Source of the DNA: Phallusia mammillata
Lineage: Eukaryota
Length of the DNA: 64,000 nt
Assembly (NCBI GenBank): GCA_965637545.1
Contig: OZ281494.1
Coordinates: forward strand, 34,224,001 to 34,288,000
Reading direction: 5' to 3'
This document shows, one piece after another, positions 887 to 46,350 of the stretch. The position numbers and the translations under genes were made by a program. The notes under the pieces were generated by a model that did not search any database, had not been told where the DNA came from, and was given only the letters and a program-made list of their open reading frames with translations. Position 1 is the first letter of the stretch. Each line of letters starts with the position of its first letter.

Positions 887-2538
887 GCTGCCAGTCAGCC
901 TACAACTGTACTTTCAAGTACGGTGTAACTGCAGCTAGTTTTGACTTGATCCACCAATTGTGCCCTCCACTGTTTTGCTCTTCATAGCGTCTTAACGTTG
1001 CTCAGATATTTCCAAATTGGTGATTGTTCATGTGCAATTGTGTCGCTATGTTTTTTTTTTCTTCAAGCGAAATGAACTCAAATCAAAAGTTCGTTTTTAA
1101 AAACCTATTTTTAAAAACATGACAACGCTAAGACATTATTTTGAATGTATTTGTCACTAAAAATGGCTCCACCCATTACTGTAAAGTCGCAAATTTACGA
1201 TTTTTTGTGTTGTGTGTAACCATGTACGAGTGCGACAAGCTTATAAAGTTTGAGAACCGCTAATAATGATTTCAGCCAGGAATAGGGTTCTAAAACCATG
1301 AAAAATTGTCTATTTTTGATCACAATTTTCTGAAACTTTGGCGTAAATTTTACAATTACGACGTTAACGTTGAGTCCTACAGTTGATTTGTTTAGGTGTG
1401 TATTTTCTTACGTTTATAGTTTGTAGAAAAATATCGACTAACTATTCAAATTTCTTGAGGTAATGGAAATGTTAAACGTACGTTGACAAACTTAATACAA
1501 AGTAAGCTTTAAAACGATTTTCGGCGGTTAAGTTATACCAGTTTTAGATTAGAGCGAAATTCAGTGTATTGCTTTGGCATTGTCAATAACTGTGTGGAAA
1601 TTAAGTCAATAACTAGTAATGTTTTTGGCAACACTTTTAACAACTTAAGCAATGTTGTGTATTACAATCTTACAATGCAACACTCATTCAGGTTGTGGTT
1701 CTTTATGCAATACTGCATTCTGTATCTGTTTCAAAGAAAAAAAATCACAGTTACGAAGCATTGCAATATAGTTCAGAGCAGTTATGCCCCTAATCTTTCT
1801 GGGAATCGCTTCTAGGCAATCGGAAGTAATCGCTACAACGATTTCGTTCCGGTTAGGGAAGCTGTGGTGGAGTGGCGACAAGCACAATGACGCAAACATC
1901 ACAGCACATTGACTGTAGACACGCCTACAATGCTAAGCCTGGCACTGTCACAAAACTTTGTGGTTCACAGACAGAACCTTATGGAACAAGTTCTGCAATA
2001 TACAGTGTACAAATCTACAAGTGAAAAACTTTGGCACAAAATGAAAGTTGACTTTGCCTGTCCAAAATGTAGTTGGTCAATGTGAATGTTGACTTTGTTT
2101 AGTGATCTTAATAAATTAACAGCTTTCCTTAGATTAAATGCAACCACATTGTTCAGTCGGTGGAACCAAATGAATGTGTTATGTGCTGTTTTTGACCATT
2201 CAACAAGCAATGTATATTTTTGGCGGACAAAGGCATTTAACCAAAATGATATTTATGTTTTTCGCTATGGGAATGTACTGTGCATCTATTTTAACACAAA
2301 ATTATGTCACAATCCGTCCTTGATATCGATTATTTTAGCTTGCTAAATCGAACCACAACCCATTTTCTGTGTACCAGAGGTTCTCAACCGGGTTACTTTG
2401 ACCCCATGGTTTATATTAGTCAGCACGGAAATAAAAGTGTGCAAAGATAATGTTAAAAAATTGGAGCCATTTTTATCTCCAGAGCCTGGAAAAAGCAGGA
2501 GAAAACGGTTGAGAATCGCGAAAAATGCTTTACAATAC

Positions 2539-2755
2539 CTTGTAGTTGCCTAATACGGCTGTCAGCAGTTGAAGGGGCACTTGTAAAGCCGTAGTCTGGG
2601 TCGTCAAAAACATGGCTACCACTGCGGCCGCGCGGGGTATTGTGTGAAGAATAGCGACCGCCGGGTCGTCGGGGTGAAACGGGGTCATCAAAGGATTCCT
2701 CGTTCGAAATCGAGCTAGATCTCGAACTCCGCTGAGAAATTGCAGCTGCTTGCAT
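2539..2755 (-). CDS. SPTBN1: Beta-spectrin alternative first coding exon (short N-terminus)
   Basis: ATG at 2755, then 72 codons (MQAAAISQRSSRSSSIS...PSTADSRIRQLQ) plus 1 nt, then donor G|GTATTG at 2538 (phase 1). The ending SRIRQLQ parallels the recalled short N-terminus of human SPTBN1 (MELQRTSSISGPLSP...GRFKQLQ|DERE). The downstream CH1 exon is not in the window. Confidence 0.75.
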
Positions 2756-5700
2756 TTTCGCTAATCACTCTCTCTGTTTAATCCTTTCCGCCGTTTGGGC
2801 GTGAATTCCGGAAATAGTGATAGTAAATCCACTTTTGTAGGCACAGATTTTTGTGGTATTAATCCAATGTTATGAGCATACTAATCCCTACGTTTTAAGC
2901 AGCACAGAGGCGCTCATATATTTACACAGGTTATGATGTATTTGCTCTTGTGACCAACAAACGCCCTGGTTTGAACCAAAACACAGTTTTAAAGAACTAA
3001 CTGTTTGACAAAGACACAAAGTACGCTATGACGTCACAACCCAATCTGTGACGAAACAAAGTTGAGAAGCAATCGATTGTTTTGATTTAATAAAACACCG
3101 TACGGTACTGTAACCAGTAAAACGTTATGCAACTCACAACTGCTGTTGTTAATTCAAAGAAAATTTCGACAACTCACAGCTTTTCACTTGCTTAAGACAA
3201 CAGCCCCCATTTAAGCTCACCACTCTGCCTTAATCAACACAGAAAACCGCTTAAAGTCCGCTGAAGTTTAAACTGGTCATCACAGCGACAGGTGGCCGCA
3301 TAGCGAAAGTTTACAATTCGGATTGAAATGGAATTGGTGTTTGGAAAGTCGGGATTTTGCTGTCGGACAAAAACTAGCATGAAACAAGGATGGACATAAA
3401 GGTCTCTCTCTAAGCCCAAGAGCTCAAGTGCTATCCCGAGTGCCCTTGGTGAACGGTTTTGAATGCAGATACGAGCTTGCTAGTTGTTCTGTATTTTAAT
3501 TAGACGATATTGCGCCTGAAAAGTTGCTTACTGGCCAAAAGCAATTTTGGATAAATGGCACTTAATCGGTGGTTAACAAGTTTCAACTTTAAGAATGCCG
3601 AAAGAAAATTGCAAAAATACTGCTTGCTTTTTCAACACACAATTGGTTGGGATGTTTCCAATTGCACATTTTTATTTTGCAGCCGCACAGGACAAGCGAA
3701 ACGAAAGCGTCACTAACACAGTAAGGTTTTATCGATTAAACCACCGACCTCTGTATGACCTTGGCACGAACGCGCGCATTTTACAAATCCGGTTGTTTAT
3801 CAATCGTTAAACGTAAACATCGTTTTATACGAACGAACAAAGCAGTCCTGATACGTAAACTGGGTGCTAAACTTTACCTTAGTATTGGTGAGGTTACAGT
3901 AGCAAATTTAAACCTTATCATTTTTTATCCATTTGACAACAAAAATATCTAAAAGGGGCAGAAACATTTGGGTTTTGAAAGCTTAACAAATCCTTAAGCC
4001 ATCTCAAATCATCCATAACGTATCGTCATTTAACACATCATAGCTGCAAAAACTGGCCAAAACATGTCAGTACAGTACTAACCACAACCCAAGTACTGGC
4101 AAACAAATTGCAAGCTAGTCATGTTTTAAACCAACAACCAATAATGTTTACAAAAAGGTCGAAAATACATGACTTTCTAGGTTTTAATGAATCTTACTAC
4201 TAATCCTCAACTATCCACGGCTATAAAATTAATCAATAACATGTCTCACTAATCCTGCTACAACACAACAGCATCAGCAGCCTAAATAAGTTCTCTGCAA
4301 TCACAGGGACTGAGCCTACTTATCAATGGAGTCGCGGACCGTACACACCATAAAGTTGTACACATGCTTCAGCAAACCACGGCCATCGAAAAGCAATTAA
4401 CAGTTGCCAGTTTCCGCTACCTTACAACGCTCCTATTTCTCTCACGCAGTGCAAGGCCAGCTAGCTATATTGGCGCAACTCTAGCTCTCTAGAACCAGTT
4501 TTTCCTCCTTTGAAAGTGAGTTAGGTTGCGTATTTGCACTGAAATAGTGGCTATATGACACCTGTGCTCGTGTTACCAACGAAATTGCGAGAAAAATAGG
4601 AGTAATATGGGATTTACGATTCAACTTTTGGTTTGACGGTCTGTCGAACGCAGTAATAGCTGTGTTTTTTTTTCTTGCTGCAAACTTCGGCTTTTGTTGG
4701 GACAACTAGTTATTTGGTGCATAAGCATGTGCATGTTTGGTTACAATTTAAACATTAAACTTCAAGATTAACTTAAGAAAGTTTTTGGTAGATTTGTGAT
4801 GCAGACCCTGGCTTTACTATTCTTATACTAGCAAGAACTTGCATAAAAATCTTCGGGCAAAAAGGCTTGAACATAGTGTTTAAAGAAACTCATACATTGA
4901 TATTTACCAATTTTCCAAACACAAACTACACTTGTGTTGGCACCAGTCTGCACAACTAATTCAAAAATACCTGTTTTAAATCAGCACATAATATGCTTTT
5001 TGTGTTAAATTGGCATCTGTCTGGAAAACAATCCAATGTGGTAAATCACATTACAACATCAGTTGGTTGGTATTTACATGCTTTGTTTTCATGGAAAGTT
5101 AAAATTCAAACCTTTCACTGATTTTCAACTGTCCTAGCTGTACTTGCGTTCAAAGAGCTTTAAGGCAAATTAAACACTTTCAAATTGCTTGAAATTTCTA
5201 CATAACAGAGAAAACATAAAACCACAACTGCCGTAGGTTACATTTCTGTCTAACATAAACCACATTACATCCAACCATCCCGATTTGACCTCGCCTACAC
5301 AAACTACCCGACTTCAACCAATTGCATTCGTCGCTTCTATCCAGCAATAGTTGAACACAGTTGTTTCAATAATCACAAAATCGATTGAACGAGTTCGACA
5401 GTAACGAACAGATCGACGTGTATTGCGATTTCCGAACGCCCTGCCTTGCTCCATGCTGGCACAATTGAGTGAGAGAGGTTACAAAGAGCACAATGGCCGA
5501 CGTTTCCATACAAAACAAATAGCGGTTCACTCGTGAGAGCAATTCGGGTTCTGAGCGCTGTAAGAGCTGCTGGCCGTTCTTGGCTGTTCAGAATAATAGA
5601 CAAACGATTGTGAATTGAGTAAATAACAGGCTATTCATGCTGGAACTATTGTGGGGTAGTTTGGAGCAAATCTGAGGCTCTAGTGTGAAGATTGATCACG

Positions 5701-7094
5701 AGAAATGTAAAAGTTGGCGAAAGTGAAAACAATAGTGACAATTTAATTATCTGATCTTATTACAGGAAAACGAGTGGATAGGCACTCGCTTTTGCTGATT
5801 TAAAACGCTAACAGTTGTGACAGAAGAATATCAATTGCGACACCCTTTTTATAAATGGAAACGCCTATAAAAAGTGGGTCTTACAACCTTCCTTTATTTT
5901 TTGTTATACTTTGCAGTTCGCTACCTTAGTCCTTAAATCTAGTAGTTTGTCTGTTGCTAACAAAAGTTGCATGGATATTTTTTTCGTTTTACACACATTA
6001 CAGGTTCATTAAAACATCCGTAAAAAAAAACACCACGTTAGTAGTAACCTTTTGCGCTTTAAAACCATTGCAGCAAAATCCCAGTCTTTTTAATTATGAT
6101 GATAGAAATATATATTTCGCCAATTCGCTAAAATCCGTTCGTTATTCAACCTTTTTTGCATAACATGACACGAAGTGCAAATCACACACACACAAACACT
6201 CACGGTTCTCAAAACCCTAAAAATACGCATAACAAAGGCATTTTACAGGTCTGCAATCTAACAAAACGCAAGCACCACATGAATGGCGTTCAATCAAGAC
6301 ATATCTTTCCGTTGCTGTCCTTTTTCGACTAACAGGAGAGCCACACAAAATATATGGGAATACGTTTTCTTACAGACACAAGCAAAACGACAAAAAACAT
6401 TCAACATGTCTTCATCTCAACTCAAGCGGGTTTCCGAGCTAGCATACTTTAAGATCCTGCTATAATATTTAAATTAGTTTTAGGTTGCGAGACGTTTAGA
6501 ATCTGCACACTATGCTACGTAATTCGTTTGTTTGTTAAAAATGGCCCACCATCTTTTACTGCTTTTGCCTACGTTGTTAAACAGTAAAAATAACACACAT
6601 GATTTAAAACGTACGCCTATTTAGGTGCGCAAACGCTACTAATAAAAAATCACCTGTCGGAAGCCATCTTACTACGCCTGCCAAAAATCGTAGGAACACA
6701 ACATAACGCCTAACAAAAAATCTAGTTGTCGTTCACACACATATAGCAGCTAAGTCAGGTAGCCATCATTTTATTCAGCAACGCCCATCCTCACTAATAC
6801 AACATCTCGCCAATCAAATTCAGCGAAGCGCGAACGAGCTATTTAGAATCTTGAAATCAATGCCTTGTCACGTGACAGCGCCGGGTCAGTTACACAAAAG
6901 ACCTGCTTACGTAGCAGTGACGTCAACCACAACACTGGCACAGAAATTAAGGAATCTTGCAGTAGTAGCACCTGCTGAGAGGCTGAGCTATTGTGAAGTG
7001 GCTCGCGTGACGGTTGCTGACAAGAATATTCTGCTACTTTTGCATAAGTTTACTGCAATTTTGTGATCTATGGTAGTTCAACTTTTCATGATCA

Positions 7095-7300
7095 TACACA
7101 CAAGCTCCCTAAATGCACTGGGGATATATGTGAGCAACATTAAATGTTCACGCGGTTGCCACACATCAGTTAATGTGCAGCATAGATTTTTGTGTGTCTG
7201 GGCTTTCACACAAGCTCCCTAAGTACACTGAGGACCACTTTCAGCAACAGTGGATGTGAATTCTGTGGCCACATACAACTTATGCGCAGAAAAGATTTTC
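7095..7300 (+). repeat. Dispersed repeat with about 110-bp internal duplication; related copy at about 51470-51640
   Basis: ACACAAGCTCCCTAA..GTGAGCAACATTAAATG..GCCACACATCAG..GTGCAGCA recurs twice locally and again in a CCP110 intron. Confidence 0.55.
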
Positions 7301-8188
7301 ATGTCTACGCAATGCGTAACGATACTGGCCTGCTGCAGATTGTTCAGAATTGCCTGTAGCCTGTGCAAGCAGCGAGTATCTTTACACGCACAACAGAGGG
7401 ATTCGATGCAGCAATGTGATAAGCAACACAAAATCAATGTTTGCCACACGATAGACATATTGGTTTGTCATGGCCTGACAGAATTATAATAATATTGGAT
7501 TGCCCAAAAGCATTACATTCACCTGACACGCAGTTACGAATCAACTGAAAAAATACCAGTTCACATGTATAATAGACATAGAATGAATCAACATGAAAAA
7601 TGGCTCTATTTTGGCATTTAAGAAAATCGCAATTACCTCGTGAAGTCGCTGGAACGAATTGAATTTCCTTAAATTGGACTTTGACGTTTCCAACATAGAT
7701 CACCTAATTTCACAAAAGTAACTTTAAATTATCAACCAAAATAAAACGACATCACTTCGCCGGTGGTTAAGTTACGGAAAAACTGGTTAATGCGGATTTT
7801 TATTTCAATTCTATTTACGGTGCATTTCCAGCAGGTCACAAGCCCGCAATTTGCGTGGCGCGTTTCTGACTCCGTTACAAGCAAATTACAGTCAAATGCC
7901 CAACGGTCTCACAAAAATGCGCGTCCCTTTGCGTCCATGTTATCGATTCTCTAATTTTGACGGCAAGAGGAATGACAGCGGAGCTAACACAATATATATT
8001 GTTACCGTGACTAATTAATTTACAAAATAGTTCTGCACGAAAGAAAATGGTCCTGTATCTTTTCAACGATCTACAACGAAAGTAAAATATTCGCACTGTG
8101 GAATTAAATACGGGCCTTATTGAAAGATGACTTAACTGAACAGGATCTTAGGTCAAAATATTTAAGTAACGAGATGACATATTACATG

Positions 8189-8367
8189 CAGTAAACCTCG
8201 GTGAATTCAGGCACGTTTGAACCAATGTCCGAACTATACGAAGATCCGGGTTAACCGATGTCGATTAGTTAAAGCCTTACCACATTGCCAATCATTTGTA
8301 CCTTAAGTTTTGTCCGAATTAGGCGAATACCTGTATTAACCGAATCCGGTTTTACCCAGGTTTACTG
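8189..8367. mobile_element. Tc1/mariner (pogo/Tigger-like) MITE
   Basis: TIRs CAGTAAACCTCGGT / ACCCAGGTTTACTG (13/14). Right flank TA, left flank TG. Confidence 0.7.
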
Positions 8368-10239
8368 TACTTTAGTGCCAATTTCGTCCACAATTGCTTC
8401 ATGAAATTGATAACAAATCCGTACATACGCAATATTTTTAGGCAAGGTTTTCGGACAAAGTAACGATCAACATAAACAGTACACAGCTATGGGCTAACTC
8501 AAACCGTCTTCTAACAATTTTCAACATTAGTTGATCCTAAAACGAAGTGTGTAATGTAGCGGCTTTGCAAGCCTGAACTGGTGAAATATTAACTAATGGA
8601 GCAACGATAGAGTCGAACAATACAGGGCGTACAAAGCTCTCATATTCATTGCCACGTTTTTCTTCAAATTTTCAGCTGTAAAACCCCAGAGGCCTATTCA
8701 AGGTCGACTGGGGTAGATACAATTGACGCACTTTTTAAAGTTTAGTGAACATTGATGTTTTTATGTGACGGCTGTTCTCAAGGCTAGGGGTGACAGTGTT
8801 TTTACTGTGTTTTTAGTGGGAACTGGTTCCAAACAGGGACAAACTTAAATGCAATAGATGACTGTTGTGTTTCGCTTAAGAGCAAACTTATAATTGCATT
8901 TATGTACCTTTTTATACGAACAAAATAGCGGGCGGTAAAAACGGCCTACATCAAAGATATTGTGCAAATGCTGCTGCGCTTCTACTTCTTTTCACCTTTT
9001 TCAAGTTTTACAATCGATTTGCACTGTAGTAGCACGAGTCATAAGAAAACAAAACCATATAAATATAAAATACAAGACAAAACTAAAAACATTTTCGACA
9101 AGCATTATAGTAACAATATAAGTAACATAGCCTACTGATGACACCAGAAAAAAACATACAGAAATTGCCAAAATTGGAGGAACCCTGAATCAACGGAAAA
9201 AATTAAAGACTACAATAACTGTGCGACGAAAACACCTCGACTTTTAAACCGTAATCATTAATGCAAAATCACAGTAACAGTATAGACAGCTGCAAAGTTT
9301 AGAGTAAAATACACGCGCAAAAAAACCGTTGGCTTTAAACCAATGCCTAACCCATTTTGCACTATCATGGTCTATTTCAACACAACTAATACTCTATCTA
9401 CTAGAAAAACATGAACACTGCAATACCCTAACGAGACTCACATAAAATAACGGACAATAGTCGAAAAAAGGGCGTTAAACTGCGAAACGGGGGGTCTGGG
9501 GAAAATGTAATGATTAACCAGCGATAAAAAAACGCTGAGAATAAGCTGGGAGGTGTTGGTTCAAGTAGGAAAACGTCAACCTTCGGCCTATTGGAATCAA
9601 ACAACGCTGTGGTGAAGCGATCGATTATTAACGACTAACAGTAGTTTAGATTGCGCGGGATCATAACTATGACGTCATGATTTCTAATGTTCAAAGTTGG
9701 GGGGTTAATTGGGGGGCGAGTTTTTAAAAAGCGATTAAAGGTGTTTAAGCAACTAAGTCTGTTTTTACAGGCGTTTTTCGCCCAATATAAGCGACTTTAA
9801 TTCTATTATTGCAGCGTCATGCTTGCGTCGCTATGTAAATGTTGTCTTTGGCAATGTTGGAAAAACGTATAAAACATTGAAAGCGGTAATTAAAGAGAAG
9901 CGGGATGGAAAAATTGCTCCATTAGGATGAAAAAAGTTACAACAAAAATCACGACCTCCAATGAACACATTCTATAAGCGTTCGTGTTTTACTACGTTGC
10001 ATAAACTTATCTCAAAACGGCCTTTTGTAAAATAACAACTTTTTTTACACCCCAATCCTAATTCCACTTACCCACAGCAACGTAACTAATTGCAATGCGC
10101 TGTTTTCAGTATTTCATTTGCAGTGTTTGCATGTGTAAGGTTTACACAACGAGGTAGCCCGTAAAAAGTAGTCTCTAAAATAATATATTCTCATAAAGGT
10201 CAACCTTTTCTGAATAACAGTGTCTGCTCAGACTAATGA

Positions 10240-10295
10240 ATGTAAAGCCCCTATAAGATCCGACTGTGGTGAGATTCGAACCCATGACGAAAGAT
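10240..10295 (-). mobile_element. tRNA-derived SINE fragment (B box)
   Basis: Minus strand GTCATGGGTTCGAATCTCACCACAGTCGG. No complete cloverleaf. Confidence 0.45.
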
Positions 10296-11651
10296 TTTTG
10301 TTTTAATTTTCACATTTTGTGTCTCAACAGTAGTCAAAAACGCCAGAAACTAACAACCTAACCCAACCAAATACAAGCCACGTTTACGACAACGCCCCCA
10401 AGCGGATTGGGCTTAACCTTGACTGTAAAGTACATCCGTTGCTCCACCAACATAACTACTTCAAGTAGAACATTGAGAGCACTCGATTCAAAAGTTTCAA
10501 AGCCATACAAGTGGCGAGTACATGAACTGTAAAGTTGCACGAGCAACGATTTAAGCCAAGCAAAAGAACTTCGACGTTTTCTGGTTTTACGACAGAGTGT
10601 TTGTTACGCTTTAGGGCAATTATTATTTTTTTCAGACATTTTAGGCTTTGAACTATTTTTGCCTTAGGAAAATCATTCGTGGTTTGAATGAAAATTTAAA
10701 GAAGTACAAACTGTATTGAGTTGAAAAAGTCGCAACAAGACATGAAACTTTCACTACCTTTTTTCTTAAAATTCCTTTTTGTTCCCTAACTACAGGAATT
10801 GGAGGGGGAAATGATTGAAAAGTTCTGTACAATATTTTCAAACATCAGCCGATACACAAAGACATCGCAGCAAACTCCGTACATGCTTCGCAACTTTTCG
10901 GAGAATCAACTGAACAGCTTACAAAGAACTAAGGCTGCCGTAGAATTGACATTTTAATTATAGGGTTTAGTCGAGAGCTCCGTACTCTTCATTGAAAAGC
11001 CTTGTGCACAATGCAAACGATATATAATGCATTAGGAGGCAAGGCATTCACATTAAGGATACAAGCATGCTAATCTTTAATCGCATGTTGCACAAAAAGA
11101 TTATCTAACAGCAGGGGCAAAAAGTGGACATAAATTTGTCATCGGCAAATTAGTATATATGTGTGTTTTAGGGACAGAAAGTTAGTTGTTGTTGCAAAAT
11201 GTTTCTAGAAATGTTTTTTTCAGGGCATTGGGGTACGATTTACACAATTGTCTGTAAATATAAAAAATCTAATGTTTTACTGTACCTAGCACTTTCCTGT
11301 TGCGTCTTGCTTTGAATTAACATATTAATAGAATGAATGAGCCTGTTTCCTAAACTTGACAAACTAGAATGAATTGACTATGTGTAATTTCTCTTCATTG
11401 AGCTACATCGTTGTGGTAATAACCAGCATATATTTACCCATGAGAACATCGTACAAATGACAGTGATAATGTGGATGAATTCTAACGTGGTCTCAGGATG
11501 AATTCTAATGTATTCTTTGTTAACAAAATAGTTCCTCGCCGTGAATTAATAAATTCGAATTTTGTTCAACTCGTACTTTCACTGAGAATGTCCGAGTAGT
11601 GCGTATTAGCAAAGTTAAATGGGAAACATTGTTTTTTTATATTACGCTAAC

Positions 11652-12548
11652 CTGCGAGTGCCTTGATGCGATTCTGTTCGAACTGACGAGCTGAGCTGTT
11701 ATCCAAATCCTCATCGTCTTCATACTCGGCAGTATCCCACCTCTTATCAATATATTCCTCCATATCGTATCCCAGATCTTCGTTGCCATTATCAACTGCA
11801 GTCTTTTGCGCTGTTTGTCTAAAAAGTACGTGTTTAGAAAGAAGGATAGATGAAAAATGAAAAAAAAAACTGCTGACAGCGCGAATAAAAATACCAACAG
11901 TAAAATCCAACAGTAAAGCTGTAGAACATACAATTTAAAACATCTTGCAAAACCAAACAGTTTTGGTCAAGTCAAGGGAATGCACATTTCACCGATCTGT
12001 ATGATTAGTTCCAGCAGTTAACACCCGACGGTGCTTGCTGGGGCAAAATTTAAACAATGCTTTTCAATAATTGTTATAATTTAAATCCAGATTAAAGAAA
12101 CGAACGAATTGGTTAACTTTTAGCAGGTTGCAAATAGGCAGGACAATTTCCTCTACCAGGCTCTTGTCTTCAAACTGAGTTGTAAAGTTTTTAGGTTTTG
12201 GCCGGAATTCAAATCAAGGAACTGGCGACTTTTTGAGTAAAAATCGCTTTTACAAACCACACCTATACCTTTTGCTGCAAGTCTAACCCTATTTAACAAC
12301 GCTAAGACAAAAAAATCGACTTCTCAAATCCAACGAACATCAAAGACTTACGGGGAAACAGCAGAAGCTGCGTTAATCTCGAACTTTCTACTTTGTTGGA
12401 CTTCACCGGCCATCTTAGATCGCACAACTTGCTCCTCAACTCCACCAGATTCGGGAACTAAGTTGTTGAGGTCGTCACGTGCAACGTTGTCCAGCTGCGT
12501 CGAAACGCCACCACTCTGAAATGTGGTCGACTGCGAATAAGCGAACAT
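11652..12548 (-). CDS. SPTBN1: Beta-spectrin canonical N-terminal coding exons
   Basis: Exon 11818-11652 (acceptor tttttag, donor G|GTTAGC, phase 2 to phase 1) encodes ...YIDKRWDTAEYEDDEDLDNSSARQFEQNRIKALA, matching recalled human SPTBN1 NNRWDVDDWDNENSSARLFERSRIKALA|DERE. The preceding exon ends at 12352 (CC|GTAAGT, phase 2, in frame) and starts at ATG 12548, ATG 12413 or acceptor 12515. Symbol is nominal: probably a co-orthologue of vertebrate SPTB/SPTBN1/2/4. Confidence 0.88.
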
Positions 12549-12653
12549 GAATTGCGAGAATGCGGCTTCAGTTTGCTTTGGAATTTACAAGCCGCTTGGG
12601 AGTGCTTTGGTGGAAAGTTGAGCCGCAAAGCAACGGAAAATGTACAATACTAC

Positions 12654-12716
12654 CTGAGTGCTGCTGGTAAAATATTCTGATCCATCAGTGTAAGCGGGTT
12701 TGAAATTCCCGGCCAT
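12654..12716 (-). CDS. Candidate alternative first exon of beta-spectrin (MAGNFKPAYTDGSEYFTSSTQ)
   Basis: gttATGG start, 21 codons, donor CAG|GTAGTA (phase 0). Compatible with the phase-0 acceptor tttcag|AGT at 12515. Confidence 0.4.
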
Positions 12717-13245
12717 AACCCGACTTTTTGTTTGAAAGCCCGAACTTGGCCCGAATCGTTTTTTGTTTTAAAGCTCAAATAGACCCTTGAACTGTACGAA
12801 TTATACGATAAGTACGTTTTATACAACTCGGGTAGCAATTTTGATCTTAGTTAAGCTTTTTTAGTTATTTTGAACCCCCCAAATGTGCTAACTGTATCGA
12901 CACATTAGGGGCAGATACGTTGAAAAGTTTAAATGATTTTTTCACTTATGAAGCCGTAAGTTATATCGAGACGTATAAGTTAGAAGTTGGCAACGATTAT
13001 TACTAATTAATTTGTAGTTTGGAAGTCAACTGTCTCTCAATTTCTTTATCCCATAAAACATTTTGTCTCATGATAGAACGTGCCATGCTCAGTTTAACTT
13101 GCAGTGTATCTTAATGTTATCGATAAAAACGTTTTTACACAGACGTTTAGGACGTGTCAACATAGCATCCAAAAACATATAAATAACACATTTCTAATAA
13201 CAAAAAGTATACAAAGGTGTAATAAACATAAATTAAAACACTAAC

Positions 13246-13971
13246 TTGGCTTTGTCCAGTGAAATATTGTCCTTGGGAGATTTGAGTAGATGTAAAATGT
13301 GGTCCACCTTCAGTGGATGAGCTGACAGTATGAACTTGTCTGCTTACTGTTTTAGAAGATGAGTGGTAGTGTCTCACCGATGATTTTGTTTCGATCACTT
13401 GTCTATTAGATAGTTCCACCTGCAATAAAAACAGTTACTCATATAAATTGCAGAAATTTCTGAAGCAAAACTTCAATCTAAGTTGAAAAACTTAAATTGT
13501 TACATAAAAATTTAATAGAACATGAAAAAAGCGATTTAGAAAGAGACCAAAAGTGTAAAGAAAAAATTTGATTATTCTGACAATTTTGACTTGAAAGTTA
13601 TTTTTTCCTGAATCATTTCTTGCTCCTATATATTTTACCAAATATGCTAAAAACTTTAATCTGCATTGGAGAGTGTATAAATTAATTAGATTTGGCAAAA
13701 GTTATCATACACAAAAACCTGCAACATAATAAAACATGAAAAAAAAACAATTTAGAAAGAGACTAAAAAACGAGATTATTCAGACAACTTTGACTTAGAA
13801 GTTATTTTTTCCCATTTTATATTTTTTTTTCTTATATTTTTTCACCAAATATGATGAAGAATCAAGACTCACTGTTTGATAAATCGGATTCAGGGCTTGC
13901 AAGTGCTCTGAAGAAACATGATACGTCCCTCGAGGATTGCCTTGTTCGTCCAATTCCTGTGAAACCTGCTC
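13246..13971 (-). CDS. Two candidate upstream coding exons extending the beta-spectrin N-terminus
   Basis: 13971-13873 (attag|, EQVSQELDEQGNPRGTYHVSSEHLQALNPIYQT, |gtgagt) and 13419-13246 (ttgcag|, VELSNRQVIETKSS...GQYFTGQSQ, |gttagt). Both are phase 0/0, stop-free and in frame with the acceptor at 12515. Confidence 0.6.
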
Positions 13972-16900
13972 CTAATTAACACAACAGGTGCAATGAGACC
14001 TATTTCATCACTACAGAAAGCTTGGAAATTTATTATTGAGCATAAGCATATGAGTTACATGTTAGTAGGTTATATAATTTTAGAATTTTGCCAGTAAAAT
14101 CTCAGAAATTCACTGTTTTTTTCTATCAGGACACCTTAACAGGCACATTTACATGCGATTAAAGGTAGTTTTTAAGTTGAATGTCTTAAATAATGTAAAA
14201 ATGTATCGTACAACCCACATTCACTTCATTATAACACATAACTACTGGTTTAGGCTAAGATTGGTGAATGTCTCTACCATGGATTGAGTTACAATGTAAT
14301 CAAAATCCTTAATCTAGGTTTGTAAGAGCTAAAACAATAGCAAGCATAAACAGACATGCCTTTACAACATAATCACATCTAAACACAACTTCATTCAACA
14401 ACACCAATGCTTTGATGTTACACTACACACACTGATTTGTTCAAATCATCAAACCGCACCTGCGCTAAGACTTTCTAAGACAATCCTAACAATTTTATGT
14501 GGGCAATTTAAGCAGTTTTATGTTAATTTTTAAGACTAAATTTCAGTAACGTTGAGTTAAAGTTTAAATGGAAAACATATTTTTAACGAATTAAGACTGC
14601 GCCAATATACACTTAATGACGAATTAAAAACGTTTTTAATACTGCTTCCACAGTCTAATATTCTGCAAACGGCTACGAAAAAACGTTACTGCAAAAATGT
14701 CTGCACTATTTTTTTGCGTTTAACTGCTTAAAAACGCTAAAGTAAGTACAGCCAACTTGCTTGCGTTGACTTTCATTAACAAAAGACATGCAAATGTGCA
14801 AGGAAACGCGGTTGGAAAACTCAGTTAAGTGTTCCAATTAGGGTAATGGGTTTACTGCTGGAGAGAAGAGCTCTCAATTGCGGCTCGACTGGACGCCGTA
14901 AGGACGAGTTCATCTATCACAGTATTCCGGACTACAAAGCTATCACGCTGTCCAACGAATGCAAGGATTGACCAGAGCCACCCAGCGCTAAATGGTCGGT
15001 AAAAATGCAAATATTGGGATTAGAGTTGAGTGATAACAGTGTGTTACCAAATCGATTGTTTTCAATATTGATTTTATTGACAAACAATGTGTTTTTTCTG
15101 TCGTTTGTGGTTTAATATAAACTTATGCAGTTGTTGGCACGCGCGAGTAAAACTTTAATAAAACGTCCGAAATCGGCAAATTGTGGCGTAATTGGTCTTA
15201 AATGAAAATGTAGACTTCCATTATTCCTATTTCGTTTCTGAACGTTTAAGGTTTCTTCATGATAATGATTCCTTAACAATTATTTTCTATTTTATGGAGG
15301 GGCTCGGCGTAAAAAGCAAATAAACAAACAGATAAATTTTATGTCGGTCGAGCTACCATGCGCGAAGAACATAAATCATTGCTGTTCTGCCGAAAAGACG
15401 AAGTGTCAAGCCGCAAAAATAGCGGGTTTCAACGTGCAACCAACCTGAAACCAACCTTGTGTTTAAGTTAAACATTTTTGCTGAAACAAATAGTCGATTT
15501 TTGCGTTGTGTGTTAAAGAACACATGCACGAATTACGGGTTTGTTGCCATTAAACAAACCTCCACTTTACTTCGACAGAAACCTAAGAAGTTGAGTTGGG
15601 TTTATTTCGCGTGGTAAACGAAAACACAGCCACAATATCGCTCTAAAACAGTGGTTTTCAACCGTTTTTTTTCGGCGGCCCATTTTAGCAACGCGATCTT
15701 AATAATGACCCGCCTTAAAAAGTTCATCGTTTTTTTGACAATAACCAAATTAAAGTTTGATTTTATCCACAAAATGGTCTTAGCTTGCTAGTTATTACAT
15801 CTATTTTAATGCGCCTTGTCCAAACCGCGTAGCGTCTATTTTCCTATAGGCAAATAATTTTGCAGCTTCGATTTTTCTGCCAAATTTTGCTACTTCAATG
15901 AGGTTTCTACCCGACATGTAAGAAACAATATTGAATCTGTACGTGAAGTCAGGCAATAAAGCGTATCTTTCATCTCTCTACCTCGTACATCACTCACCGG
16001 GATCTCGTATTGGAAAAGAGCAAGTGACGACTGACGGGCATAAAATAGTATGTGGTACTGTATCAGGAAATCTCTGTATATCGTATTCAATACGATGCAA
16101 GGACATCAATTAAGGGTTAGGTATATTTATGTTTAACGTTTGATCCCAGAAAGTAAAGAACGCTGCTGCAAACTTGTAACGAGCGCAACTTGCAATATAG
16201 GTGTCAAATATATCAATTCCAAGGCGTTTAAAGTACTCACTCTTGACCAGAATGGTGAAACACCAACCTTATGGAATGTCAACCTATACAGTTTGAAATA
16301 TGTATGTCTGAGCTGTCATACAACATGCTAAATAACTTGGGGGGAAATGTAGCTGCATTGTCTGCTAGATTAGGAAATAAGGTAACTTCGAAAATACAAT
16401 TTTATGTTCACAAAGTGTCTTGAACGTGTGTTAATTCAAGCGTAAAGTCGTTGTCGCGCAGTAAAGCGTGTTATCGCAAAACAGTACAACTCCAGTTTGC
16501 CGCAATTTGAATTCACAGCGATTTGTTTTTGACTCAACAAACAACAGTCGCACACTGCCAACCGGACTATGTCGAATTCCCAAGTGCCTCGTATCTTGAA
16601 GCGGGAGTGGCCGACACGTCAATCACGAGATAAGCTCTCTGTGTGCTAACATGCTGAACTGTACCAAGAGGTTAAACGCCAACACACAAACGGAAAACTC
16701 GCAGTTAGGCTGTTGCAGAGGTCAACGCCAATTAACGCTACTCGCCCTTGTTATTACCTCGTCTTGTGACATCACACACTGGCATTGTCTAGTCAAGCAC
16801 GTGACTGAGATTGTTTATGTTTAAATGGCGCGAAAACAAGTAACTGAACTCTGCCACGAGGTAGTTAGTACCAGTCGTGCTAGAATAGGCGTAAATATGT

Positions 16901-23220: not shown

Positions 23221-33548
<10,328 letters not shown>

Positions 33549-38622: not shown

Positions 38623-41600
38623 ATGGCAAGTCAATCTAATGTAAGTCAGGTTTGTTAACAGTTGTTAATACTTGTAATAGTTTGTAATATGTTTCATTAG
38701 TTAACAAAAGGTGTTTGCATTCAGATGCGTGAATTTGATGCTGATGATATTCTGTGTGACCCAAAGTCAAGTATTGTGGGTTCTGGAAGTTTCGGAGTGG
38801 TTCTCGTCGGAAAACATAAATCACTCAACAAACTTGCTGTGAAAGTCATGGAATGCCATGGCGGGGAACAAACTAAAAAACGGTTTCAAAAATGGTGAGC
38901 TTGCTTAAAAGATAATGTACTACAGTATGTCAAACCTTTTGAAAATAACTCAACTTATCCATGCAGTACGTAACAAGCATGTAATTTAAACCCATTACGA
39001 TAAAACTTTTAGTTAAAACCAAATATTTTAGGCCTAATTTTATTTACAGTGCCATGGAAGAACTGGGTAAGCTGCAAACTGCCCAAACTGAACACGTAGT
39101 GAGGACATATGGCTGGTTGACGCTGTCGTGTGGCATGGGAATTGTCATGCAGTATTATGAAGGTGGTAACCTCAGAGATTTTCTTCTCAATGACGAAATC
39201 ACCAAAGGAATTCCACTCCGTCTTCGTCAGTTGGTCGAAACAGCGGACGGAATAGCTTTCATTCACAATTTGCCAGGTCACAAATTGGTTCATAACGACA
39301 TAAAACCAGAAAACATCTTGCTGACGAGAGATCTACACGCAAAATTGACAGATTTTGGCTCCGCAAAGCTTGCTGCTACAACTGGATCAACCACTGTTCG
39401 ACTTTCAGCAACTGGAGAAAAGGTTCAATTCACTGCTCTATACACCGCTCCAGAAAAACTTAAAAAAATTACCATGAAACCGAAAAGAGACCATGACGTG
39501 TATGGGTATGGCTTGGTAATCCATATGTCTCTTACTTGTGAAGAGCCTTATCCACCAACGGATGGAGTTGCATTGTTGAATGCCATCATCAACGGTGAGA
39601 GACCTGACTGTCATGCGATTGATGATTTGAAAGCAGGTCTCAATAACAACGACAAAGGAGCAGTCGAAGTGATGGAAGAAGAAATGAAAAGATGCTGGGA
39701 GCACGATCCAACAAAACGTCCAGATATAACTGAAGTTAGAGACAAATTTCAGAGTTTAGTTGACGCACAAAACCCAGCAGCGATTCTGGAACAAGTGACA
39801 AACGCTGTGAGGCAAATGGATTTAAAAGTTGAAAGACCAGCTGAGAATCAACGTGTTCCGATTCGCCAGTTTTCACCACGTCACCAAACATTTGTAACAG
39901 CACAAGGTATAAAGCGAATGTTGGTTGAATAACTAGACACAAAACTTTACAATATTTTTTTTAATTATTAACGTCCTTCCGTTTATAATGACACCATTTT
40001 CGTTATTCGTGCGTATGTACAACCGATGTTTGTTGATTGACAGATTTGAGCAGACCAGCAGTCAACATCGACCTTCCCAGCACATCACGTGACACGCCAG
40101 CAGGTCAAAGTTCACGACCACAACTGATGGAAACAGCACATGGCGTCACATCACCACAGGAACAAGGTATTTCAGTATCGCACACTTGTATTCATATCTC
40201 CCTTCCGAGATAAAGCTTGTTACGTATTTAAACCAAAAGCAAGGTCAAAATCTTTCCAATTAACCATGCCATGCAACTATCAATTTTTTGGACAGTATTA
40301 TTAACTTTCCCAAAACACCCCACGTTGTTTCAGAACAGCCTCGTTAAAAAATAAGTTAAAAACGGCGCAATTTAAAATGAACACCCAACAGCGGCAACAA
40401 ATTTTGGGGGTGACTGGCTGTTATAGGCCAGGGGTGGCCAACCCGCGGCTCGCAAGCCGCATGCGGCTCTTCGCCTGGTTTTATGCGGCTCTTACGTCGT
40501 TGTCGAAGTTTGGGGCCATTGTGTATATTTGGGTTACTATGTGGCGATCCGGTACAAAAATCGTTAAATTGAAAGTAAAGTTTTGACAATTTTGCTTTTG
40601 AACAAACTTATTATCGGTATGGCCACAAACCTTGCCTTAAAACTGCAAGTTTATGTGACAAATGGCATGATTATGATGGCATATATTTAATTGTGAACAA
40701 TAAATGGTTGCTCATTGTTGCGTACAATGCGAATGAGACACAAAGCAACAGCAATATTTACAATAAATGTGTTCCAAAGTAACCAATGCTTCTTTGTTTT
40801 TCGGGTTATGACGAACGTTATATTTTATCGGCAATTTGTCTTATGGGTTTGAATTGAGCGATTGTCGGTGGTGAATGCATTAATGACGTCGCAATGAATT
40901 TAGTTTCGCCACTTTGCACTTGGGGCACATGCGCGTTAGGTGTTTGGGGCGCGTGCGCCTTAGATGAAAAAACCGCAAGTTTTTTCAGCAGGGAAAATCT
41001 TTTAAATCAACAGTTTTTGTCAAGGTAGCCGTCAAATTGGCGGTGAAAAAAGATTTTAGCAATTCACCAGTGATGAATCTCACCGCAAGTTATTTATAGA
41101 ATGAGAAAAAGGGGTGTTTTAATTCATATGTTTTTGTTTGCTGGATTCGTTGAAATGAGAGTTTTATGTGAGAGATAGTGTTTGCACTGACCATTTATTG
41201 TTGAAAATGACTGGCCCGTGGTCTGTACAAGTCAAATTGTGTCATCTGGCTAAGCACAGGTCTCTGTGTGTGTGTGGAAGGGACGAACCATTTAACAAAT
41301 GTGCTTGTGTGTATAATGTGGCCCTTTGTGGTAACACAATAAAAAATATGGCTCTTAGGCTTCGACCGGTCGGCCACCCCTGATATAGGCAGTGGAATAA
41401 TAATAGTTTTTTTGTATTTGGGTCGATTGTGCGACATATTTTAGTCTTTTGGGAGATATTTGTAAGAAAAACATGCTTGACAAATTTAGGTGACGTCACT
41501 AGCACAGACCTAGATGAAATATTTCAACCCAAAAGTAAGTTTTCCTCGTTTGTTTTTTGTCGTGTTTCCGCGTGTTTTGTATATCAATGTACTTTTTTTT

Positions 41601-42359
41601 ATTTTGTCAGGTGGAAGTAACGAAAAGTCCCGGTTGGTTCAGAAATACGCCGATTCTGTGAAACGGGGAAAATACAACGAAGCAAATTTAATAAAACAGC
41701 AACTTTCAAGGTTAATCGAAGGTCAAGTCAAAACCACAGCAAATGAAATAAAAACTTTTGCTGTAAAACATCGAAATGCGAAGAAATTTAACGAGTCGAT
41801 CCTGTTCTGCCATATTGCATCAGATTTCTATGCAAAGCAACAAAGTCCCGATGACGCAGCGAGAGGTGTACAGGATTGTGGTTTGGAATTGAGTGAAACA
41901 AGCAAATCAATGTTGGAGAGTGACGTCACAAACAAATCCATTGTAGGCGACCACGTGATTTCCTTGTTTGCTGACATGCGTCACCAGATTCAAACTCTAC
42001 CACAAGTAGACGACAAAATTCGATGTGTATGTGAGGCCAGGTGTTTGAGTTGCATTGGAGTTGGCCTTCTGTTGATCGGATCGTATCAACTGATGGAAGA
42101 ACCTATCAGGGAAGGAATAAGTTTGTTGAAACGCAAGTTTGGAGATGGTGCAGCCAAATATCAAGTCTACGGTCACTTGTTGAACAACCTTGGACTGTAC
42201 TGTGAGTCAACCTCACGTTTTGAGGAGGCTGTGAAATATTCCACCGAAGCAATTGAAGCTTACAGAAAATCTGAGGATTTGACCGAGGAAGAGCGAAAGC
42301 GACTCATGGACAAGAGCCAAAGAAATTCGTGGAGACTCATGACATTACAGAAGCTATAA
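38623..42359 (+). CDS. RIPK-like (TKL group) Ser/Thr kinase with C-terminal TPR-like helical domain, about 638 aa
   Basis: Exons 38623-38640 (MASQSN; uncertain because exon 2 also begins with ATG), 38725-38894, 39050-39906, 40044-40166, 41611-42359, with phases 0/2/1/1 consistent. Kinase motifs GSGSFGVV, LAVK, HNDIKPEN, DFG, YTAPE, DVYGYG are intact. The C-terminus contains YGHLLNNLGLYCESTSRFEEAVKYSTEAIEAY (TPR-like). Confidence 0.88.
40429..41382. mobile_element. Non-autonomous hAT (Charlie-like) element in kinase intron 4
   Basis: TIRs CAGGGGTGGCCAACC / GGTCGGCCACCCCTG (14/15). 8-bp TSD TTATAGGC / ATATAGGC. No transposase ORF. Confidence 0.85.
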
Positions 42360-45689: not shown

Positions 45690-46350
45690 CAGTGTTTTTC
45701 TTGACCAAACGAGCGTTAGACACATTTACGTTTCGGGGGCCTGTGGTTGAACCGCTGGGTCATTCGGGGTCAAACTTCTAGAGCAGGGGTGGGCAACCTG
45801 CGGCCCGCAGAGTCCAATCATTACTTATTTTTGAGCTGATTAATGTGCCTGCGGTGCTAGTTTTCTCCGATATGGAAAAATGTGGCTAGAATCAAACACG
45901 AATTATACTTGTAGTTCAGCATATTTGGTAAAAAACAAAGCAAAATCACTTTGTGTTCTGCACATGTGCGGCCCGCGATCCAATTTTGACATTTATAATT
46001 GGCCCTACAGTAACAATGGTTGCCCACCCTTGTTCTAGAGGATCAAGTTAAGATTGATAACTAACATATGTCCAAATTTGAATAAATTTAAAGCATTCCT
46101 TCTTTACCACACGAGCAATAAAACCAGCGTTAAAAATTTTACGTTTCGGGGACCTGTGGGTGAACCGCTGGGTCAATCGGGATCAAACTTTAGGAGGATC
46201 AAAATTGGATTATTAACTAACATCTCTGTAAATTAGAACAAAATTGAAGCACTCTTTCTTGACCAAACGCGTCTCACAAACAAGCGTTAGACAGAAAAAA
46301 ATACGGACAAAAACAATATGTGTCCCCTTCAGGGAAGGGGACCCATAATT
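45690..46350 (+). mobile_element. Helentron/HINE-like non-autonomous element with about 156-bp internal tandem units
   Basis: Two diverged units (ACGTTTCGGGG...GAACCGCTGGGTCA..CGGG.TCAAACTT at 45728 and 46141; 156-bp period once the nested MITE is removed) and a 3' hairpin GTCCCCTTC-AGG-GAAGGGGAC followed by CCATAATT. Family assignment is an inference. Confidence 0.45.
45784..46032. mobile_element. hAT (Charlie-like) MITE nested in another repeat
   Basis: TIRs CAGGGGTGGGCAACC / GGTTGCCCACCCTTG (14/15). Perfect 8-bp TSD TTCTAGAG. Confidence 0.88.

What the first reader, a model, noticed from the sequence alone, without database searches (positions are those of the whole stretch)
38623..42359. 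Non-RD RIPK-like kinase fused to a TPR-like helical domain: candidate lineage-specific immune or cell-death signalling protein
Seen: an intact catalytic kinase whose catalytic loop is HND rather than HRD, a 41-codon Ser/Thr/Pro-rich linker exon, and a single-exon about 250-aa helical domain with TPR-like segments (EARCLSCIGVGLLLIGSYQLMEEPIREGISLLK; YGHLLNNLGLYCESTSRFEEAVKYSTEAIEAYRK). Established: RIP kinases normally carry death domain, CARD, RHIM or ankyrin tails, and non-RD kinases (IRAK1, RIPK1, plant PRR kinases) are enriched in innate recognition. Inference: TPR acting as sensor or scaffold is a non-vertebrate architecture. Its two very large exons (857 and 749 nt) contrast with the small-exon neighbours, and it sits between conserved genes, which suggests a modular, recently inserted member of an expanded family.
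Basis: partly seen in the sequence, partly recalled or inferred. Interest (0 to 1): 0.75.

Follow-up and report, generated by a model that had tools for sequence, protein, structure and literature searches.

The report
Sea-squirt RIPK-like kinase with TPR tail
This is an intact gene for an active-looking protein kinase, most like the human inflammation and cell-death kinase RIPK1, joined to a helical TPR docking domain found so far only in sea squirts; I found no paper on the combination, and its role in immunity is a guess.

Summary
Five exons with GT..AG borders (38623-42359, + strand) give one 638-aa frame. It comprises a complete kinase with an HND catalytic loop, a 41-codon Ser/Thr/Pro-rich linker exon, and a 248-aa C-terminal domain on one 749-nt exon.

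The kinase scores best against RIPK1, then RIPK4, RIPK3 and RIPK2, well above IRAK4. No tree was built.

The C-terminal domain folds with pLDDT 97 into 11 helices. It matches Pins/LGN and kinesin-light-chain TPR domains. It belongs to a family of about 100 sequence clusters, and every named member is ascidian (Ciona, Phallusia, Styela, Clavelina). The domain is almost always C-terminal.

Two Phallusia cDNAs also join a kinase tail to this domain. A third carries the same kinase with SH3 instead, and a fourth puts the domain behind a transmembrane receptor-like protein. The parts are therefore modular.

Spliced contigs from probable RNA runs and raised DNA depth over the exons point to several close, expressed paralogues.

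Best reading: a cytosolic RIPK-like kinase recruited through a peptide-binding TPR tail. An immune or cell-death role, and "recent insertion", remain untested. The scan has already noted this family elsewhere in this genome.

The parts
38623..38640 (+). Exon 1: start codon and 6 codons (MASQSN)
   Evidence: GT donor follows. The Phallusia relative P0187 begins its homologous part with MASTNE. A contig of run X5 continues upstream of 38729 with letters like this exon (table 7). The ATG at 38725 is a possible alternative start.
38725..38894 (+). Exon 2: glycine loop GSGSFG and the beta-3 lysine (AVKV) of the kinase
   Evidence: Weak Pkinase hit at profile positions 4-41. AG/GT borders. A contig of X1 joins 38891 to 39054 (table 8).
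39050..39906 (+). Exon 3 (857 nt): the rest of the kinase domain and a conserved extension after it
   Evidence: PK_Tyr_Ser-Thr 1e-28. RIPK1 is the best solved match. 34-40% identical to P0153-P0155 and 42% to P0187.
39291..39299 (+). Catalytic loop His-Asn-Asp (non-RD)
   Evidence: Read. Relatives read HGD, HGD, NGD and HQD. RIPK1 reads HKD in the alignment.
39351..39359 (+). DFG motif
   Evidence: Read. Invariant among the four aligned kinases.
39855..39878 (+). Conserved motif after the kinase, VPIRQFSP (consensus [VIL]P[LI]xxF)
   Evidence: P270, F274 and F281 are invariant in alignment A2. The same motif occurs in Phallusia P0002, P0166 and P0187. Its function is unknown.
40044..40166 (+). 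Exon 4: 41-codon Ser/Thr/Pro/Gln-rich linker, phase 1 on both sides
   Evidence: Composition. Contigs in X1 and X2 join 39906 to about 40044 (tables 5 and 8). No Pfam hit.
40429..41382 (.). High-copy transposon-like element with terminal inverted repeats, inside intron 4 (not part of the protein)
   Evidence: 15-nt inverted termini. DNA depth is 100-500 times that of the neighbouring unique intron (table 2).
41611..42359 (+). Exon 5 (749 nt): 248-aa TPR-type helical domain and the stop codon
   Evidence: AlphaFold2 pLDDT 97.4 with 11 helices. Foldseek finds Pins/LGN and KLC TPR domains at probability 1.0 and TM 0.5-0.6. VIA-align Z 14-16 to TPR proteins. The family profile hits KLC1 at 7e-22. 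64 of 94 family members hit TPR_12.

Best explanation
The locus is one intact, transcribed gene of a sea squirt. It encodes a cytosolic, catalytically competent serine/threonine kinase of the RIPK1-4 kind, with a non-RD (HND) catalytic loop. A conserved short extension and a disordered linker tie the kinase to a C-terminal solenoid of about five TPR-type helical hairpins. That domain is of the LGN/kinesin-light-chain type, which binds short peptides in its groove.

I infer that the tail is a docking module. It would take the place of the death domain, CARD, RHIM or ankyrin tails of vertebrate RIP kinases and bring the kinase to partner proteins. Candidate partners include membrane receptor-like proteins that end in the same domain.

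Shown here: the gene structure, the kind of kinase, the fold, the restriction of named relatives to ascidians, and the modular use of the domain. Inferred: peptide docking and recruitment. Guessed by analogy: a role in innate immune or cell-death signalling.
For: - Gene model with canonical borders and one open frame.
- All catalytic motifs are present.
- The best solved relatives are RIPK1 (89 bits), RIPK4 (84), RIPK3 (75) and RIPK2 (62), against IRAK4 at 57. A four-sequence profile gives RIPK1 137, RIPK4 118, RIPK2 116, RIPK3 99 and IRAK4 97.
- The complete kinase domain of relative P0187 passes 1e-20 only for RIPK1, RIPK4 and RIPK2.
- The TPR fold rests.
- The domain family has 102 clusters at E<=1e-10. 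It is C-terminal in 90 of 93 matched domains; the other three are the internal copies of P0001. Named members are only Ciona, Phallusia, Styela and Clavelina.
- The kinase-TPR join is seen in Phallusia cDNAs P0002 and P0166.
- The receptor-like P0151 has a cysteine-rich ectodomain, a transmembrane helix and the same tail. Its TPR is 68% identical to that of kinase-linked P0166.
- Spliced contigs exist in two probable RNA runs.
Against: - No functional or expression-in-context data exist.
- The window's own TPR stays below Pfam's cut-offs (19.5 against 30.1 bits).
- The RNA-type contigs differ from the window by 2-10%, so they may come from alleles or close paralogues rather than this copy. The runs are only guessed to be RNA.
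- The exon 4 to exon 5 joint is seen only indirectly (table 5c).
- Four TPR exons of unnamed species have no kinase exon within 8-10 kb upstream, and no annotated Ciona, Styela or Clavelina member I saw carries a kinase. The fusion may therefore be confined to part of the ascidians.
- No phylogeny was run.
Confidence: 0.7

Rival explanations
1. Self-regulated kinase. The TPR tail binds the conserved [VIL]P[LI]xxF motif just after the kinase domain of the same molecule, or of a second copy. This would hold the kinase off, or dimerise it, until a competing ligand arrives.
For: The motif is invariant in its key residues across distant relatives and lies one flexible linker away from a peptide-binding type of fold. 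In the model of P0002 the motif region has pLDDT 60-72, against 38 for the linker behind it.
Against: The motif is also kept in P0187, which has SH3 and no TPR. The model gave no contact information, so docking was not seen. The motif may simply pack on the kinase.
Confidence: 0.15
2. Direct sensor kinase. The variable TPR domain itself recognises a microbial or danger ligand, as TPR sensors of STAND/NLR-like proteins or IFIT proteins do. Ligand binding would then switch on the RIPK-like kinase.
For: The family is large, divergent and lineage-restricted, with 27% mean column identity across 94 domains. Close paralogues exist. Non-RD kinases are enriched in innate recognition (established knowledge: Dardick and Ronald 2006).
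Against: There is no evidence of ligand, induction or diversifying selection. The domain has only about five repeats. It also occurs as the cytoplasmic tail of a membrane protein, which fits an adaptor better than a sensor.
Confidence: 0.12
3. A non-immune cell-biological kinase. LGN/Pins and kinesin light chains work in polarity and transport, and by analogy the tail would target the kinase to cytoskeletal or trafficking complexes in development.
For: The nearest solved folds are Pins/LGN and KLC1/2. A paralogue carries SH3, a general adaptor domain.
Against: Fold similarity of TPR solenoids says little about function (notes). Rapidly expanding lineage-specific families are unusual for core cell biology. 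The kinase is closest to RIPK1.
Confidence: 0.1
4. Two genes or a decaying copy. The TPR exon would be a separate small gene starting at the ATG of 41514, like the 246-300-aa TPR-only proteins annotated in Styela and Clavelina. Alternatively, this copy is a silent recent duplicate.
For: An ATG-initiated 281-aa ORF covers the exon. TPR-only proteins are annotated in other ascidians. No contig matched this copy exactly across a joint.
Against: The residues before 41611 are translated polypyrimidine tract. The phases match across all four introns and the frame is intact. A contig with the same depth as the exon 3-4 joint continues at 41612 (table 5c). Phallusia cDNAs carry kinase tail and TPR in one frame.
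Confidence: 0.05

Closest known systems
Vertebrate RIPK1 (and RIPK2-4): TKL-group receptor-interacting kinases
   Same: N-terminal kinase domain with the highest scores to RIPK1. No arginine before the catalytic aspartate, as in RIPK1 (HKD). A long flexible intermediate region is followed by a C-terminal protein-interaction module.
   Different: No death domain, RHIM, CARD or ankyrin repeats. The tail is a TPR solenoid. Orthology to any one vertebrate RIPK was not tested. Identity to RIPK1 is modest, as the scores show.
Amphioxus RIPK1-5-like expansion with assorted extra domains (PMC9573974)
   Same: A lineage-specific expansion of RIPK-like kinases in an invertebrate chordate, with domains swapped in. 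That paper lists LRR, DEATH, SH3, ZU5 and Zalpha. An SH3-bearing paralogue exists here too (P0187).
   Different: That paper did not sample tunicates and lists no TPR partner (no occurrence of 'tunicate', 'Ciona' or 'TPR'). The TPR module here has named relatives only in ascidians.
'RIPK1 without death domain' reported for Urochordata (statement in PMC11507063)
   Same: The literature already notes RIPK1-like genes in urochordates that lack the death domain, and a 'Ci-RIPK2' in Ciona.
   Different: No C-terminal TPR domain, no family expansion and no receptor-like proteins with the same tail are described there.
LGN/Pins and kinesin light chain TPR domains (Pfam TPR_12 type)
   Same: The best structural and profile matches. 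There is a conserved YGxLLNNLG helix of the TPR_12 kind. Such domains hold extended peptides in the concave groove (established knowledge).
   Different: About 5 hairpins instead of 6-8. The first 135 residues have no sequence match to any Pfam TPR model. Sequence identity to the solved domains is 13-17%.

Membership tests
RIP kinase family (RIPK1-4 branch of the TKL group) | Kinase domain more similar to RIPK1-4 than to other kinase families | tested here: met
   RIPK1, RIPK4, RIPK2 and RIPK3 fill the top ranks, 20-40 bits above IRAK4. For P0187 no other family passes 1e-20. This is a ranking of scores, not a tree.
RIP kinase family (RIPK1-4 branch of the TKL group) | Kinase domain at the N-terminus, followed by an intermediate region and a C-terminal interaction module | tested here: met
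   kinase at residues about 15-300, linker about 300-390, TPR 391-638.
RIP kinase family (RIPK1-4 branch of the TKL group) | C-terminal death domain, RHIM, CARD or ankyrin repeats | tested here: not met
   A Pfam scan of all exon products finds none of these. The tail is TPR-type.
RIP kinase family (RIPK1-4 branch of the TKL group) | Placement inside the RIPK clade in a phylogeny with IRAK, MLK, TAK1 and LRRK outgroups | not tested
Non-RD kinases | No arginine directly before the catalytic aspartate, with the other catalytic residues intact | tested here: met
   HND at 39291-39299. GSGSFG, AVK, DFG and APE are present.
Tetratricopeptide repeat (TPR) superfamily, TPR_12 / KLC-LGN type | Pfam TPR model matched above the curated cut-off | tested here: inconclusive
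   The window's copy scores 19.5 bits against a cut-off of 30.1. Of 94 family members, 64 match TPR_12 at E<=0.001, and P0001, P0034 and P0073 exceed a cut-off.
Tetratricopeptide repeat (TPR) superfamily, TPR_12 / KLC-LGN type | Stack of antiparallel helix pairs forming a right-handed solenoid, superposable on solved TPR domains | tested here: met
   pLDDT 97.4 with 11 helices. Foldseek probability 1.0 to Pins, LGN, KLC1/2 and sNASP. Z 13.8-16.1 to TONSOKU, Pins, LGN and the designed CTPR.
Tetratricopeptide repeat (TPR) superfamily, TPR_12 / KLC-LGN type | Binds a peptide ligand in the concave groove | not testable with these tools
   The model tool gives no coordinates or contacts.

The most novel reading that the evidence does not exclude
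In ascidians this TPR domain would act as a dedicated signalling connector, doing the job that death-fold, TIR and RHIM modules do in vertebrates. Membrane receptor-like proteins and RIPK-like kinases that carry matched TPR tails would find each other through those tails, or through a shared ligand. The expanded, divergent family would then form many parallel receptor-kinase channels of an innate recognition system that has not been described.
Probability: 0.2. Interest if true: 0.8.

Novelty: new variant of a known kind. Interest (0 to 1): 0.55.

Why it matters
RIP kinases sit at the decision point between inflammation and cell death in vertebrates, and their origin outside vertebrates is unclear. 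Tunicates are the closest living relatives of vertebrates. Published surveys either skip them or note only 'RIPK1 without a death domain'.

A multi-copy tunicate family joins a RIPK1-like, non-RD kinase to a lineage-specific TPR docking domain. The same domain occurs on a membrane receptor-like protein. Together these give a concrete, testable candidate for how these animals wire a receptor to a RIPK-type kinase without death-fold or RHIM modules. If the immune link fails, it remains an ordinary example of domain shuffling in a fast-evolving kinase family.

Tried and rejected
1. Whole-protein searches and a whole-protein fold were left out. The spliced 638-aa product has no reference and long sequences may not be typed, so domains were searched apart.
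2. The word-index searches were weak for this family. The kinase exon found only three close relatives. A Phallusia TPR region found only its own paralogue. P0166 added only P0187.
3. I looked for a TPR exon downstream of related kinase exons on metagenome contigs (L001-L006). None was found, but at most 3.3 kb of downstream sequence was available.
4. I looked for a kinase exon within 8-10 kb upstream of four TPR exons of unnamed species (L007-L015). None was found.
5. An exact look-up of the exon-5 ORF in public assemblies found nothing on record.
6. I folded Phallusia P0002 (kinase tail, motif, linker, TPR) to see whether the conserved motif docks on the TPR. The only signal is a middling pLDDT for the motif and no contacts are available, so the test is inconclusive.
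7. Linker exon homology to Phallusia linkers is not above shuffled controls.
8. Pfam scans of the presumed CP110 exons gave no hit.
9. A first Pfam and comparison call on locus ORFs failed because the called genes there are not simple ORFs.
10. Rejected: an MLK/MAP3K identity, which is the source's name for P0187. Only RIPK1, RIPK4 and RIPK2 pass 1e-20.
11. Rejected: a retrogene origin. The intron between the exon 2 and exon 3 homologues is kept in distant relatives.
Full report
**Gene model.** On the + strand, five exons join into a 1917-nt frame of 638 codons ending at the TAA of 42357-42359. The exons are 38623-38640, 38725-38894, 39050-39906, 40044-40166 and 41611-42359, each bounded by AG and GT. 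The two big exons are the only ORFs longer than 250 aa in the whole 64-kb window. The window holds no second copy and no N.

**Kinase.** Exon 3 matches Pfam PK_Tyr_Ser-Thr (1e-28) and Pkinase (7e-28). Exon 2 supplies the glycine loop and the beta-3 lysine.
- All catalytic motifs are present: GSGSFG, AVK, the alpha-C glutamate, HND-IKPEN, DFG and APE.
- The loop lacks the arginine before the catalytic aspartate. The relatives read HGD, HGD, NGD and HQD. Human RIPK1 reads HKD at the same place in the printed alignment.
- Against all solved structures the exon scores RIPK1 89 bits, RIPK4 84, RIPK3 75, RIPK2 62 and IRAK4 57.
- A profile of the window plus three relatives gives RIPK1 137, RIPK4 118, RIPK2 116, RIPK3 99 and IRAK4 97.
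- The complete kinase domain of the Phallusia relative P0187 passes 1e-20 only for RIPK1, RIPK4 and RIPK2.

So 'RIPK-like' is supported by score ranking. I could not build a tree, because no reference kinases could be obtained.

A stretch after the kinase domain, ending in [VIL]P[LI]xxF (VPIRQF at 39855-39872), is conserved in all relatives.

**C-terminal domain.**
- Alone, the 248 residues of exon 5 give only sub-threshold TPR hits (TPR_12 19.5 bits) and weak matches to kinesin light chain.
- The exhaustive search found 423 relatives at E<=0.001 and 102 at E<=1e-10.
- Ninety-three domains cover most of the query. Ninety of them end within 50 residues of the protein's C-terminus. The exceptions are the internal copies of one Ciona protein that carries the domain in tandem.
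- Of 94 aligned members, 64 match TPR_12, and some exceed Pfam's cut-off.
- The family profile hits KLC1 at 7e-22 over profile positions 137-215.
- AlphaFold2 on this alignment gives pLDDT 97.4 and pTM 0.92, with 11 helices.
- Foldseek's best matches are Pins, LGN, KLC1/2 and sNASP (probability 1.0, TM 0.5-0.6). The Foldseek-independent search returns only TPR and 14-3-3-like proteins, with Z up to 16.1.

The tail is therefore a real TPR-type solenoid of about five hairpins plus a cap. It is of the kind that holds peptides in its groove (established knowledge for LGN and KLC).

**Distribution and modularity.** Every family member that carries a name is from an ascidian: Ciona intestinalis, Phallusia mammillata, Styela clava or Clavelina lepadiformis. 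All are 'uncharacterized'. The rest are unnamed contigs. This is my own evidence that the window comes from a sea squirt; I did not identify the species.
- Two Phallusia cDNAs (P0002, P0166) begin with the last 34 residues of this kinase, then the conserved motif, a linker and the TPR domain. The fusion therefore exists in a second species.
- P0187 of Phallusia has the same kinase: 42% identity, the same MAS... start, an HQD loop and the same motif. It carries SH3 and no TPR.
- P0151 of Phallusia has a cysteine-rich ectodomain with a weak Sushi hit, one strong transmembrane helix and the TPR domain as its cytoplasmic tail.
- P0151's TPR is 68% identical to that of kinase-linked P0166. The two kinase-linked tails are only 37% alike. 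Either the module has moved between gene types, or receptor and kinase tails are kept alike.
- Four TPR exons of unnamed species have no kinase exon within 8-10 kb upstream.
- No annotated Ciona, Styela or Clavelina member that I saw holds a kinase. The fusion may be confined to part of the ascidians.

**Transcription, splicing and copy number (one reads call).** Contigs of runs X1 and X2 (kind guessed as RNA) skip intron 2 (38891 to 39054) and intron 3 (39906 to about 40044).
- In X2, a piece with the same depth as the exon 3-4 contig starts at 41612. This fits the exon 4-5 joint but is indirect.
- These contigs differ from the window by 2-10%. They may stem from alleles or close paralogues.
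- In the DNA-type run X7, contigs identical to the window have depth about 270-520. Bins that lie in unique intron sum to 350-450. Exon bins sum to about 2,000-15,000.
- The tool warns that such sums are no copy number. Still, mismatched contigs of normal depth over the exons show that several copies at 90% identity or more exist.
- The intron positions are shared with relatives only 34-40% identical. The gene is therefore not a retrocopy.

**Context.** Upstream on the same strand lie exons of a Trf4/TENT4-type nucleotidyltransferase. I could not confirm CP110 with Pfam. Intron 4 carries a 954-nt element with 15-nt inverted termini and very high genomic depth. I could not test synteny in other ascidians, so 'recently inserted' stays open.

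**Mechanism.** Most likely (0.7 for the molecular picture) this is a soluble, active RIPK-like kinase whose TPR tail docks it onto partner proteins. The immune or cell-death role is an analogy from three things: RIPK1-4, non-RD kinases in general, and the fast, lineage-restricted expansion.

Rivals are self-inhibition through the conserved motif, direct ligand sensing by the TPR, a non-immune cell-biological role, and two separate genes or a silent copy. A fold of P0002 meant to test motif docking was inconclusive.

**Literature.** Full-text searches for ascidian or Ciona with RIPK and TPR found no description.
- PMC9573974 documents an amphioxus RIPK-like expansion with LRR, DEATH, SH3, ZU5 and Zalpha partners. 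It did not sample tunicates and never mentions TPR.
- PMC11507063 notes urochordate 'RIPK1' genes without a death domain, and a Ciona 'RIPK2'.

Hence this is a new variant of a known kind, not a new kind.

**Earlier notes of this scan.** The scan had already flagged kinase-TPR genes of this family at other places in the same genome. From those notes I took three leads: sea squirt, receptor-like proteins with the same tail, and an SH3 variant. I checked them on public proteins as described above.

**Not done.** I made no search or fold of the spliced full-length protein, because no reference exists for it. I also made no kinase tree, no genome-wide census and no synteny comparison.

Noticed in passing
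window 40429-41382 (also 45784-46032 and 26351): A 954-nt element in intron 4 has 15-nt terminal inverted repeats CAGGGGTGGCCAACC. Its depth in DNA contigs is 100-500 times that of the flanking unique sequence, and it also appears in the probable RNA contigs. A shorter pair of the same termini lies 250 nt apart at 45784-46032. It looks like a very abundant MITE-type transposon family.
   Followed up: partly
P0187 (Phallusia mammillata, 768 aa): This protein has the same kinase subfamily, N-terminus and post-kinase motif, but its long linker ends in an SH3 domain instead of TPR. Its source names it a MAP3K, while its kinase passes 1e-20 only for RIPK1, RIPK4 and RIPK2.
   Followed up: partly
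P0151 / P0003 versus P0166 (Phallusia mammillata): A type-I membrane receptor-like protein ends in a TPR domain 68% identical to that of a kinase-linked paralogue. Two kinase-linked tails are only 37% alike. Either the module was recently swapped or receptor and kinase tails are matched. Chimeric transcript assembly is not excluded.
   Followed up: partly
P0001 (Ciona intestinalis XP_026692798.1, 1277 aa): This protein carries the TPR domain in tandem: four matched stretches, three of them near full length. It is either a true repeat protein or a gene model that merges tandem genes.
   Followed up: no
window 27248-27466 and 28349-28645 (+): Exons of a Trf4/TENT4-type non-canonical poly(A) polymerase. 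They hit the MTPAP-like central domain at 27 bits, and the best solved match is yeast Trf4 (3nyb).
   Followed up: partly
window 39820-39906 and the relatives' equivalent: A conserved helix plus a [VIL]P[LI]xxF motif directly follows the kinase domain in all family members, whatever tail they carry. It has no Pfam match and no known function.
   Followed up: partly
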